Source of the DNA: Selaginella moellendorffii
Taxonomy: Eukaryota; Plantae; Lycopodiophyta
DNA: 64,000 nt
Direction of reading: 5' to 3'
Assembly: GCF_000143415.4 (NCBI RefSeq)
Contig: NW_003314270.1
Span: 2,039,048-2,103,047 of the forward strand
Shown: positions 34,142-36,172 of the stretch, piece by piece
Layout of the letters: the number at the start of each line of letters is the position of its first letter
Numbering within the stretch: position 1 is the first letter of the stretch
Notes under the pieces: generated by a model
The model's database searches: none
Seen by the model: only the letters and a program-made list of their open reading frames with translations
Told to the model about the DNA's origin: nothing
Position numbers and translations under genes: made by a program

Positions 34142-35559
34142 ATGGCGGGGCTCTTCTCGCGGTTTAAGAAGAAGGCGTTCCGGATGGAGATGCTGGTGTG
34201 GTGGACGCTGCTGGGAGTGCTTGTGGGAATCGCGCTGGGAGCTGGGCTTTACAATTCGCATCCCTCTGCTCTAACAGTGGAGCTCCTGGGTATGTATCAT
34301 AAGAGAAAAGATCTCCCCGTCGTTTGTCCTAAAAGCTCGATCTCTTTTCCTTTTTGCTTTCAAGGGTATCCTGGAGAGCTTTTCATCCGAGCTTTACAGG
34401 CCCTGGTTCTGCCATTGATTATGCTCGCATTGATGTCTGGAGTGTTCAGCTTGAGACACACAACCAGTGGGTATGATATTTTTCCTGTGATGTAGCTCGA
34501 TTTCTTTCTTGGCAAAAATGTAGAGTTGGCCGTATCACCAAGTGGTCTCTACTGTATTATCTACTGTCGATGATGCTTGCCGTGGTTTTGGGAATCGTCA
34601 TGGTGTCGGTGATCAAGCCTGGGAGAGACAAGCCATTCGACGACTCGGGTTTCACAAAGTGTGCCACTCGCAATGGAACTTCCCCCACAGAGTGAGAGTG
34701 ATACTTTCATGCTGTTTTCAGTTCTTACTTGAAGTTTTTTTTTATTTCTAGCACACCAAAGGCAGCAGCTGGGACTGTGGATTCCCTGCTCGAGATTGGC
34801 CGCGACTTGCTTCCTACAAACATCGTCGCGGCCGCTGCGAAGCCAAACTATTTGGGAGTCATGACTTTCGCCATTGTCTTCGCTTTCGCCACCAATACAT
34901 TCGGTGAGAAAATCTCTAAACCTGTCAAGGAAAAAAGCTCGTAACTCTCTCCTTTGTGTACCTCCAGGTGAGCGAGCCGAGCCTCTAGTTCATCTCATCG
35001 AGCTCTGCAACACCATCTTGATAAAAATCGTAACTTTCTTGTGTCTTCGATTGATCACAATCTTACATTGCTTTTTTCTTCTCCCGATCAGATCTTTGTA
35101 GTGGTCATGTTCACGCCCGTCGGAGTTGCGTCGCTCATCGCAGGCACCATTCTCAAGGCATGCAACGCCGTCCATCTTCTCAAATCTCTCGGCTTTTACA
35201 TGGCGACGGTGCTGGGCGGATTCTTCATCCATTCCACGCTGGTGCTGCCACTCACAGTCTTCCTCCTGTCGAGGCAAAATCCCCTCAAAGTTTTCAAGTA
35301 AGCAGCCCGGTTCTTTGAGCTCTTGAAGATCACAAGCTGGTATAAAGCGATTTGCTGCGTATCTACCAGATCATTTTTGCCAGCGCTGTGCATGGGACTG
35401 GGAACTTCCTCCAGCGCCGCCACAATGCCAGTGACAATGCAATGCGGCGGAGAACACGGCTGCGACCAGAGCATCGTCCAGTTTGTGATTCCTCTAGGAA
35501 CCAACATTAACCGCGACGGTGCCGCGCTCTACGAGGCAGTCTCAGCAATTTTTATCTGC

Positions 35560-35607
<48 letters not shown>

Positions 35608-36101
35608 CTCTTCGTCCTCCATCTCTCTCTCACTCACTTTTTTCTCTTCGTCCTCCATCCAGGCTCATGGAATCCATCTACCTGTAAGCAGCCTCTTCGT
35701 CATCGCCATCACTGCCACTCTCGCCGCTGTTGGCTCCGCGTCCATTCCCAGCTCCGCTCTGGTGACCATGATCACTGTTTTACAGGCAAGCCAGCTTTAA
35801 GCAAGACTATGCGAAGATTTTTTTCTCAATCTTTTCTTCTCCAGGCTGTGAATCTTCCCCAGTTTATTGGTGACGTTTCGGTCCTTTTTGCCGTGGACTG
35901 GCTGCTGGGGATGTTTCGCACGTCCGTTAACATCTGGGGTGATGCCTGTGCCTGCGTCGTCGTCGATACCTGGAACAAGCGATTCTCCAGGAAGCAACGA
36001 CCTCTCGAATTTCCCGACCAGGTAGCCATTCTTTCTTCTTCTTTCTCTCTCTCTCTCTCTTTGATGAGTTGTTTGTGATTCCCAAGGTGGCGCCAGTTTG
36101 A
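34142..36101 (+). CDS. SLC1/DAACS (dicarboxylate/amino acid:cation symporter, GltPh/EAAT-like) transporter
   Basis: GYPGELFIRALQALVLPL, HP1 GTSSSAATMP, TM7 PLGTNINRDGAALYE, HP2 ATLAAVGSASIPS and TM8 AVDWLLGMFRTSVNIWGD. Ends VAPV*. Includes a GC-AG intron at 35786-35844. Confidence 0.93.
35564..35603. repeat. (CT)n microsatellite in a DAACS intron
   Basis: Long ct run immediately after the donor GT. Confidence 0.9.
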
Positions 36102-36172
36102 TAAAACTCGTTGGAAGTATAATTCCGATCAAACTATCTATAGACACAAAATATGTATATATCAACATTAAG

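What the first reader, a model, noticed from the sequence alone, without database searches (positions are those of the whole stretch)
35500..35945. SLC1/DAACS transporter with a rewired substrate/ion site (NMDG->NRDG; TM8 Asp->Gly)
Seen in sequence: TM7 reads NINRDG and TM8 reads DWLLGMFRTSVNIWGD. Established: in GltPh/EAATs the NMDG Met (M311) couples Na+ binding, and TM8 D394 binds the substrate alpha-amino group, while R397, N401 and D405 (retained here) bind carboxylate and Na+. Inference: loss of the amino-group ligand and gain of a fixed positive charge point to a non-amino-acid di/tricarboxylate substrate or altered ion coupling. To my knowledge SLC1 transporters are absent from angiosperms, making this an unstudied plant transporter class.
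Basis: partly seen in the sequence, partly recalled or inferred. Interest (0 to 1): 0.7.

Follow-up and report, generated by a model that had tools for sequence, protein, structure and literature searches.

The report
Rewired glutamate-transporter relative of non-seed plants
This Selaginella gene encodes an expressed relative of animal glutamate transporters in which the residue that holds an amino acid's amino group is lost and a sodium-coupling methionine is an arginine. All green algae, mosses, liverworts, lycophytes and ferns that carry the gene share these changes, so it probably moves something other than amino acids, but nobody has tested it.

Summary
NINRDG (35503-35520, Arg codon 35512-35514) and DWLLGMFRTSVNIWGD (35896-35943, Gly codon 35908-35910) lie in exons 7 and 9 of a ten-exon gene on the + strand (34142-36101). 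Its product is the 449-aa Selaginella moellendorffii protein SELMODRAFT_438697. It is a full-length SLC1/DAACS protein (PF00375, 335.7 bits).

- **Expression:** RNA-type contigs from three studies show every splice junction and no difference in either motif.
- **Not private to this copy:** a green-lineage clade (100/100 support, stem length 0.88) runs from Coccomyxa, Klebsormidium and Mesotaenium through liverworts, mosses and lycophytes to ferns. No seed plant was found in it. Arg is present in 23 of 23 members and Gly in 20 of 23 (otherwise Ala, Ser or Cys). Synonymous codons differ between species.
- **Further clade-specific changes:** EAAT3 T102 to Met (Na3 site), GltPh T308 to Asn (Na2 site), and single changes in HP1 and TM2.
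- **Retained:** R447, T448, N451, D455, E374 (EAAT3 numbering) and the Asn and Asp of NMDG.

Precedents for a neutral TM8 residue are DctA, mosquito CuqDCT and EAAT3 D444S/T448A. They make a non-amino carboxylate substrate with altered cation coupling the best reading, but this is inference. I found no paper on these proteins. The scan noted the same motif pair on another piece of this genome.

The parts
34142..34289 (+). Exon 1 (start codon 34142; residues 1-49 plus the first base of codon 50; N-terminus and TM1)
   Evidence: Translation and donor GT at 34290; RNA contig joint 34288/34364, cut +1; 100% match to P0151
34365..34470 (+). Exon 2 (TM2). Holds clade-specific Ala71 (34427-34429), which is Ser in other SLC1 proteins
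   Evidence: PF00375 positions 29-58; joints; signature column
34524..34691 (+). Exon 3 (TM3). Ser100 and Met101 (34567-34572) align with EAAT3 T101 and T102, the Na3-site hydroxyls
   Evidence: PF00375 positions 62-98; alignment to EAAT3 chain 6s3q_A; invariant SM in the clade against TT elsewhere
34752..34903 (+). Exon 4 (TM3-TM4 region; lacks the long animal TM4 insertion)
   Evidence: PF00375 positions 107-150; joints; gap against EAAT3 159-210
34968..35029 (+). Exon 5 (20 full codons)
   Evidence: Joints 34902/34967 (cut +1) and 35029/35092 in RNA contigs; match to P0151
35092..35297 (+). Exon 6 (TM5-TM6)
   Evidence: PF00375 positions 176-239; joints
35370..35562 (+). Exon 7: HP1 (GTSSSAATMP, Met300 at 35425-35427) and TM7 with NINRDG (35503-35520). 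Asn326 at 35503-35505, Arg329 at 35512-35514 (CGC), Glu336 at 35533-35535
   Evidence: PF00375 78 bits; alignment to EAAT1, EAAT3 and GltPh; zero differences in RNA contigs
35663..35785 (+). Exon 8: HP2, tip SIPSSA at 35741-35758; followed by a GC-AG intron
   Evidence: PF00375 positions 306-346; RNA joint 35782/35842 with a 5-base ambiguity, consistent with 35785|35845
35845..36021 (+). Exon 9: TM8 motif DWLLGMFRTSVNIWGD (35896-35943). Gly408 at 35908-35910 (GGG) in place of the amino-group Asp. Arg411, Thr412, Asn415 and Asp419 are retained
   Evidence: Translation; alignment to EAAT3 D444-D455; zero differences in RNA contigs
36087..36101 (+). Exon 10 coding part (Val-Ala-Pro-Val, stop at 36099-36101). 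The 3' UTR runs to about 36142-36160
   Evidence: Loose end at 36085 joins the exon 9 end to this acceptor; the C-terminus of P0151 ends ...PDQVAPV

Best explanation
Shown: the window carries an intact, transcribed, correctly spliced ten-exon gene for a 449-aa SLC1/DAACS transporter (SELMODRAFT_438697). Its full elevator-type fold is predicted with confidence. It belongs to a subfamily found only in the green lineage outside seed plants. On that subfamily's stem the solute and ion site was rebuilt and then held by purifying selection. The changes are: the Met of NMDG to Arg; the TM8 Asp that binds the substrate alpha-amino group to Gly (rarely Ala, Ser or Cys); GltPh T308 to Asn; EAAT3 T102 (GltPh S93) to Met; and fixed changes in HP1 (Leu to Met) and TM2 (Ser to Ala). 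The carboxylate-binding Arg, the Asn that binds the main-chain carboxylate, the Asn and two Asp of the Na1/Na3 sites, and the EAAT-type Glu of the YE motif are all kept.

Inferred: with no acidic partner for an ammonium group, and with an extra fixed cation at the residue that normally touches the substrate and separates it from Na2, the protein most likely carries an anionic substrate without an alpha-amino group. C4-dicarboxylates such as malate, succinate or 2-oxoglutarate are the leading candidates, and a more negative tricarboxylate is possible. Cation coupling is probably altered: the Arg may stand in for or abolish Na2, Na3 is weakened, and coupling may be to H+ or to fewer Na+, which would suit organisms that energise membranes with protons. 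Short hydrophilic N-termini without an obvious transit peptide suggest a plasma-membrane or endomembrane location.
For: - Gene model and expression.
- Family and fold: PF00375 335.7 bits over the full profile; AlphaFold2 pLDDT 87.9, pTM 0.85, with a helix break at 328-329; Foldseek top matches are EAAT2, EAAT3 and ASCT2, TM up to 0.87.
- Residue mapping.
- Conservation: 19 of the 22 best 50%-identity cluster representatives carry N(I/V)NRDG, while the next-best hits are canonical. All 37 clade proteins whose motif could be read have NRDG.
- Phylogeny: the clade is one branch with 100/100 support and stem length 0.88.
- Signature columns: 9, of which 6 lie in known binding-site elements.
- Selection: the Arg codon is CGG, CGC or CGT and the Gly codon GGT, GGC, GGA or GGG across five species, and an intron position is shared.
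- Restriction: the NRDG core occurs only in green non-seed lineages among 5.8 billion proteins.
- Literature: D394 binds the amino group and M311 contacts the substrate (PMC12668577). Asp to Asn in CuqDCT and Asp to Ser in DctA go with dicarboxylate selectivity, and EAAT3 D444S/T448A gains succinate transport (PMC3737229). Met is conserved in all known Na+-coupled SLC1 proteins and is Leu in H+-coupled ones; it sits between Na2 and the substrate (PMC8431971).
Against: - No transport, binding or localisation data exist.
- No atomic coordinates were available, so where the Arg329 side chain points could not be measured.
- Gly is not the Ser or Asn of the known dicarboxylate carriers.
- Thr412 (EAAT3 T448) is kept, whereas CuqDCT-type proteins have Ala there, as does the EAAT3 double mutant that gained succinate transport.
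- D405, D312 and N310 are retained, so sodium coupling is not excluded. The published H+-coupling signature (T92 to a hydrophobic residue, M311L, D405N) is absent.
- Single EAAT3 mutants D444S and D444N were transport-dead rather than re-specified. Function after Asp loss therefore depends on context that I cannot evaluate.
Confidence: 0.5

Rival explanations
1. It is still an acidic amino-acid (Asp/Glu) transporter. The substitutions only retune ion coupling, and other groups such as HP2 carbonyls hold the amino group.
For: R447, T448, N451, the HP1 serines and the YE motif are kept. Databases name the relatives 'Amino acid transporter' or 'excitatory amino acid transporter 4-like'. These names are automatic.
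Against: D394/D444 coordinates the alpha-amino group and sets selectivity for amino acids over dicarboxylates. EAAT3 D444S and D444N give no Glu or Asp transport currents. A fixed guanidinium at the substrate-contacting position should repel an ammonium group.
Confidence: 0.1
2. It carries another kind of anion, or is mainly an anion channel or sensor rather than a concentrative carboxylate carrier. Candidates are an inorganic oxyanion, or a keto-, hydroxy- or monocarboxylate. The second fixed cation would create an anion site, and the TM2 Ser to Ala change would alter the SLC1 anion pathway.
For: Net charge of the pocket shifts by +2. A clade-fixed TM2 Ser to Ala change exists. From my own recollection, not checked here, TM2 serines influence the uncoupled anion conductance of EAATs and GltPh. 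The HP2 tip has lost two Gly residues.
Against: The complete transport-domain machinery is conserved, which fits a working elevator carrier: HP1, HP2, the unwound TM7 and the Na1/Na3 acidic residues. R447 specifically pairs with a carboxylate in all characterised members.
Confidence: 0.2
3. It is a decaying or non-functional relic, an assembly or annotation artefact, or contaminant DNA.
For: DNA run X1 shows 1-base deletions inside exons (34373, 34682, 35885).
Against: All those deletions lie in homopolymer runs of a 95-99% alike data set. RNA contigs from three studies give an uninterrupted frame. The protein is identical to the deposited one. There are plant-type introns with positions shared from Coccomyxa to Selaginella. 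The gene tree largely follows the species tree. 79 of 435 columns are invariant across the clade.
Confidence: 0.02

Closest known systems
Animal EAAT1-5 and ASCT1-2 (SLC1A family)
   Same: Best sequence and structure matches: about 35% identity, phmmer E 1e-80 to 1e-64, Foldseek TM up to 0.87. Shares the HP1 serine motif, N-x-D-G in TM7, the YE motif (EAAT3 E374), and R447, T448, N451 and D455. The animal clade is sister to the wider algal/protist group that contains this clade.
   Different: Met367 to Arg, Asp444 to Gly, Thr102 to Met, Thr364 to Asn. No long TM4 insertion. Restricted to the green lineage. ASCTs lose R447 but keep the Asp, which is the opposite pattern.
Mosquito dicarboxylate transporters CuqDCT and AeaDCT (PMC3737229)
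   Same: A eukaryotic EAAT-like protein in which the TM8 Asp is neutralised while the Arg is kept. It was shown to prefer succinate, malate and 2-oxoglutarate over glutamate. An orthologue-type sequence (P0205, DWLVNRFRA) is in my alignment.
   Different: There the change is Asp to Asn together with Thr448 to Ala, and NMDG is intact. It lies inside the animal clade. Here the change is Gly, Thr is kept, and Arg sits in NMDG: an independent and more extensive rewiring.
Bacterial C4-dicarboxylate transporter DctA
   Same: Same family. The TM8 Asp is replaced by a small neutral residue (Ser) and the Arg is kept.
   Different: P0151 scores 191 bits against a DctA cut-off of 513. DctA is H+-coupled with Leu in place of the Met. 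The green clade has Arg, keeps D405, and is phylogenetically of the eukaryotic EAAT type.
GltPh and GltTk archaeal Na+/aspartate symporters
   Same: Same fold and compact size. Residue-for-residue alignment over 12-426. They are the reference for the roles of M311, D394, R397, N401 and D405.
   Different: About 29-30% identity. They have the canonical Met and Asp, and all three Na+ sites are intact.

Membership tests
SLC1 / DAACS (Pfam PF00375, Sodium:dicarboxylate symporter family) | Full-length match to the family profile above the curated cut-off | tested here: met
   335.7 bits against a cut-off of 27.9, profile positions 1-387 of 387. The exon pieces are collinear on the profile.
SLC1 / DAACS (Pfam PF00375, Sodium:dicarboxylate symporter family) | Eight TM helices plus two re-entrant hairpins, with TM7 unwound at the N-x-D-G motif | tested here: met
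   AlphaFold2 pLDDT 87.9. Helix-loop-helix at 284-310 and 353-387, helix break at 328-329. Foldseek probability 1.00 to EAAT, ASCT and GltPh structures.
Na+-coupled acidic amino-acid transporters (EAAT / GltPh type) | Met in NMDG (GltPh M311, EAAT3 M367), conserved in all known Na+-coupled members | tested here: not met
   Arg329. Arg in 23 of 23 clade members. Conservation statement from PMC8431971.
Na+-coupled acidic amino-acid transporters (EAAT / GltPh type) | TM8 Asp that binds the substrate alpha-amino group (GltPh D394, EAAT3 D444) | tested here: not met
   Gly408. G, A, S or C across the clade, never D, E or N.
Na+-coupled acidic amino-acid transporters (EAAT / GltPh type) | TM8 Arg for the side-chain carboxylate, and the Asn and Asp of the Na1 site (R447, N451, D455) | tested here: met
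   R411, N415 and D419 are invariant in the clade.
Na+-coupled acidic amino-acid transporters (EAAT / GltPh type) | Two TM3 hydroxyl residues of the Na3 site (EAAT3 T101 and T102; GltPh T92 and S93) | tested here: inconclusive
   Ser100 keeps a hydroxyl and Met101 does not. Both are invariant in the clade. The effect on Na3 is unknown.
DctA C4-dicarboxylate transporters | NCBIfam DctA model above its cut-off; the H+-type signature (Leu for Met, Asn for D405) | tested here: not met
   191.4 and 173.4 bits against cut-offs of 513 and 570. Arg and Asp are present instead.
ASCT-type neutral amino-acid exchangers | R447 replaced by Cys, Ser or Thr, with the TM8 Asp kept | tested here: not met
   Arg411 is kept and the Asp is lost. 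Compare P0203, which has DWLVDRTCT.
Insect DCT dicarboxylate transporters | Asp to Asn with Thr448 to Ala, inside the animal SLC1 clade | tested here: not met
   Gly408 and Thr412. The green clade is separated from the animal clade by branches with 98/88 and 100/99 support.

The most novel reading that the evidence does not exclude
The invariant Arg in place of the NMDG Met acts as a tethered cation that permanently fills or replaces the Na2 site. Together with the lost amino-group Asp and the weakened Na3 site, this would convert an EAAT-type carrier into a proton-coupled or low-sodium carrier for di- or tricarboxylates. It would be the first SLC1 transporter in which a side chain substitutes for a coupling ion, as Lys or Arg does in some LeuT-fold carriers (that comparison is my recollection, not checked here). 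It would also define an organic-acid transport route of algae, bryophytes, lycophytes and ferns that seed plants discarded.
Probability: 0.25. Interest if true: 0.8.

Novelty: new variant of a known kind. Interest (0 to 1): 0.6.

Why it matters
The two residues changed here are among the most discussed in glutamate-transporter mechanism. Published statements say that the Met is conserved in all known Na+-coupled SLC1 proteins and is Leu in H+-coupled ones, and that the TM8 Asp is stringently conserved in eukaryotes apart from the mosquito DCTs. A whole lineage that fixed Arg and Gly offers three things:

- A natural experiment on how substrate and ion coupling can be re-engineered in the elevator fold.
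- A candidate for an undescribed organic-acid (or other anion) transport route in non-seed plants and green algae.
- A clear gene-loss event at the origin of seed plants.

Tractable models carry orthologues: Marchantia polymorpha (MPTK1_1g13310) and Physcomitrium patens. The question is therefore directly testable.

Tried and rejected
- **Literature.** Searches for plant or algal SLC1/DAACS work found nothing relevant. 'Excitatory amino acid transporter' together with Physcomitr* gave zero papers. One survey only says that SLC1 is 'predominantly in Bilateria' (PMC3058773).
- **Exon 9 against PDB.** It reached EAATs and ASCT2 but not GltPh at E 0.01. GltPh numbering for TM8 therefore rests on the EAAT3 alignment plus the literature equivalence D444 = D394.
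- **Orthologue DNA.** DNA for the Physcomitrium protein (P0167) and the Adiantum protein (P0158) could not be fetched. The Klebsormidium TM7 motif is split by an intron and was not recovered.
- **Side-chain geometry.** The structure tool returns no coordinates. The position of the Arg329 side chain relative to the Na2 and substrate sites could not be measured.
- **Apparent frameshifts.** I read the 1-base deletions in DNA run X1 as homopolymer errors of a divergent data set.
- **Chloroplast targeting.** N-termini in the clade are short and charged, but no predictor was run.
- **Operators' rule on spliced models.** I did not type or join the exons. Exons were searched one by one by reference. 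For whole-protein work I used the database protein P0151, which is identical to every exon piece.

Full report
**1. What is in the window**

The stretch 35500-35945 is not one ORF. It covers the end of exon 7, all of exon 8 and most of exon 9 of a + strand gene with short GT-AG introns (47-100 bp) and one GC-AG intron.

I placed the exons by eye:
- 34142-34289
- 34365-34470
- 34524-34691
- 34752-34903
- 34968-35029
- 35092-35297
- 35370-35562
- 35663-35785
- 35845-36021
- 36087-36101

Three independent checks support the model.
- The nine larger exon pieces, translated by reference, hit Pfam PF00375 in strict order: profile positions 29-58, 62-98, 107-150, 176-239, 242-305, 306-346 and 348-387.
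- Contigs of three RNA-type runs from different studies (X3, X8, X20) carry exactly these joints. They also join the exon 9 end to the acceptor at 36085-36086.
- Every exon piece is 100% identical to P0151, SELMODRAFT_438697 of Selaginella moellendorffii. This protein has 449 aa and its C-terminus ends ...PDQVAPV, as the model predicts.

The window is therefore S. moellendorffii, and the gene is expressed.

**2. The observation**

Exon 7 reads ...GTNINRDGAALYEAV... and exon 9 reads ...AVDWLLGMFRTSVNIWGDA....

phmmer against all PDB chains aligns INRDG with INMDG of EAAT1. Coordinate arithmetic on the reported ranges puts the Arg on GltPh M311 and EAAT3 M367. AVDWLLGMFRT aligns with AVDWLLDRFRT of EAAT3 (chain 6s3q_A, native numbering). 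Gly408 thus falls on D444, and R411, T412, N415 and D419 fall on R447, T448, N451 and D455.

The RNA contigs show no difference over either exon. The only difference shared by all runs is a synonymous A>G at 35686.

DNA run X1 is 95-99% alike and shows 1-base deletions only in homopolymer runs. I read these as sequencing noise or another haplotype, not frameshifts.

ATG to CGC needs three substitutions.

**3. Family and fold**

P0151 matches PF00375 over the whole profile at 335.7 bits.

It does not reach the NCBIfam cut-offs for DctA (191 bits against a cut-off of 513), GltP or SstT.

An AlphaFold2 model built on a 52-sequence alignment has pLDDT 87.9 and pTM 0.85. It shows both helical hairpins and a helix break exactly at N328-R329.

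Foldseek returns EAAT2, EAAT3 and ASCT2, then GltPh, with TM up to 0.87. The best matches are inward-facing states.

Compared with animal EAATs, the long TM4 insertion is absent.

**4. Are the substitutions private?**

No.

*Representative search.* An exhaustive phmmer of exon 7 against 1.84 billion cluster representatives gave a distinct top group. Of the 22 best hits, 19 carry N(I/V)NRDG. The next hits, at 57-60% identity, are canonical T(I/V)NMDG with DWxLDRxRT.

*Relatives of the Diphasiastrum representative.* A search with this protein returned relatives from these groups:
- lycophytes: Selaginella, Diphasiastrum
- ferns: Adiantum, Ceratopteris
- mosses: Ceratodon, Physcomitrium
- liverworts: Marchantia, Riccia, Calypogeia
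- streptophyte algae: Klebsormidium, Mesotaenium
- trebouxiophyte green algae: Coccomyxa, Elliptochloris

There was no seed plant. All 37 of these proteins whose motif could be read have NRDG. TM8 reads DW..G M.RT in nearly all, with Cys, Ala or Ser in three.

*Core-region search.* A word-indexed search restricted to residues 296-345 found only 30 candidates in 5.8 billion proteins. All 24 significant hits come from these same lineages.

*Tree.* I built an IQ-TREE tree (LG+C20, 58 sequences, trait columns removed). It gives the following:
- The NRDG proteins form one branch with 100/100 support and a long stem (0.88 changes per column).
- That branch sits inside a 100/99 group with other algal and protist SLC1 proteins that keep the TM8 Asp.
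- The wider group is sister to the animal EAAT/ASCT clade (98/88).
- Inside the clade, the land plants form one supported group (96/93). The algal lineages lie outside it in an unresolved polytomy.

*Codons and introns.* The Arg codon is CGG, CGC, CGT or CGC, and the Gly codon is GGT, GGC, GGA, GGA or GGG, in Marchantia, Coccomyxa, Klebsormidium (Gly only), Diphasiastrum and Selaginella. The intron after '...F-I-x-Q' is shared.

The pattern is vertical inheritance under purifying selection since before the chlorophyte-streptophyte split, followed by loss in the seed-plant line.

**5. The rewiring is wider than two residues**

I looked for columns at least 85% fixed in the clade, at least 70% fixed to another residue elsewhere, and rare across the boundary. 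There are nine (P0151 numbering):

| Position | Elsewhere | Location or role |
|---|---|---|
| A71 | Ser | TM2 |
| S100 | Thr | Na3 site (EAAT3 T101) |
| M101 | Thr | Na3 site (EAAT3 T102) |
| M300 | Leu | HP1 |
| N326 | Thr | GltPh T308, whose carbonyl is an Na2 ligand |
| R329 | Met | NMDG motif |
| L400 | Ile | not assigned |
| G408 | Asp | TM8 amino-group ligand |
| A422 | Gly | not assigned |

Kept invariant are N328, D330, E336 (EAAT3 E374), D404, R411, T412, N415 and D419.

Overall, 79 of 435 columns are invariant at a median pairwise identity of 54%.

The HP2 tip has Ser and Ala where EAATs have two Gly residues.

**6. What the literature says these residues do**

- D394 coordinates the substrate amino group, and R397 the side-chain carboxylate. 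Together they set specificity for acidic amino acids over dicarboxylates and neutral amino acids. M311 flips into the pocket on Na+ binding and makes van der Waals contact with the substrate (PMC12668577).
- The Met also coordinates Na2 and separates it from the substrate. It is conserved in all known Na+-coupled SLC1 proteins and is Leu in H+-coupled GltP and DctA (PMC8431971).
- The TM8 Asp is described as stringently conserved in eukaryotes. The exception is the mosquito DCTs (Asp to Asn), which prefer succinate, malate and 2-oxoglutarate. DctA has Ser at this position. EAAT3 D444S and D444N are inactive, but D444S/T448A transports succinate (PMC3737229).

**7. Interpretation**

*Shown.* This is a real, expressed, selectively maintained SLC1 subfamily with a rebuilt binding core.

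*Inferred.* The ammonium partner is lost and a fixed cation sits at the substrate-contacting, Na2-adjacent position. The pocket is therefore two charges more positive. This argues against alpha-amino acids and for an anionic, non-amino substrate. Given the precedents, a dicarboxylate is the best guess, and a tricarboxylate is possible.

Changes at Na2 (T308N, M311R) and Na3 (Thr to Met) argue for altered cation coupling. The retained Na1/Na3 acidic residues and the EAAT-type Glu leave H+ or reduced Na+ coupling open.

I put about 0.5 on the carboxylate-carrier reading as a whole. Rivals:
- an amino-acid carrier despite the changes: 0.1
- another anion, or channel or sensor behaviour: 0.2
- an artefact or relic: 0.02

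**8. Novelty**

The proteins are deposited as 'hypothetical protein' or under automatic names such as 'Amino acid transporter'. I found no paper on them.

The fold and family are known. The Arg-plus-Gly signature, its further accompanying changes, and its phyletic pattern appear to be undescribed. I rate this a new variant of a known kind.

The scan's index shows the same motif pair noted on another piece of this genome. I did not examine it; it is presumably the second haplotype or a paralogue.

- Read laying was given 2,301 letters.
Whole-protein analyses used the stored protein P0151.

Noticed in passing
Proteins P0188, P0190-P0193, P0195, P0019, P0027, P0034, P0046 (not in the window): A second set of algal and protist SLC1 proteins (including Botryococcus) keeps the TM8 Asp and Arg. 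It replaces the Asp of NMDG, giving NM(S/T/N)G or NLSG, so an Na3/Na1 carboxylate is lost. This is a different, also uncharacterised, rewiring in the sister lineages of the NRDG clade.
   Followed up: partly
Protein P0057 (407 aa, groups with a deltaproteobacterial sequence): An independent Arg at the NMDG Met position (ALNRNG). It has a canonical TM8 Asp-Arg, but WANG where the others have WGD(A/S). It sits on a long branch and its origin is unknown.
   Followed up: no
window 35786-35844: Intron 8 has a GC donor (CAG|GCAAGC) instead of GT. The RNA contigs confirm the splice.
   Followed up: yes
window 35563-35605 and 36036-36060: (CT)n microsatellites lie inside intron 7 and intron 9. Read laying skipped them as repeats, so the exon 7-exon 8 joint is supported by contig continuity only.
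   Followed up: partly
window 34373, 34682, 34733, 35818, 35885 (run X1): A DNA data set of the same organism label is only 95-99% alike. It shows 1-5 base deletions, all in homopolymer runs, plus about 19 SNPs. Those I checked in exon 8 are synonymous. It is probably the other haplotype or another accession with noisy reads.
   Followed up: partly
   Followed up: no
Selaginella paralogues P0168, P0184, P0187, P0189, P0204: S. moellendorffii has several further copies. P0168 is the closest relative of the window gene. It has Cys at the Gly408 position, Ala for the following Met, and a changed HP2 tip. P0189 and P0204 carry an extra PF25072 hit, which may be gene-model fusions.
   Followed up: no
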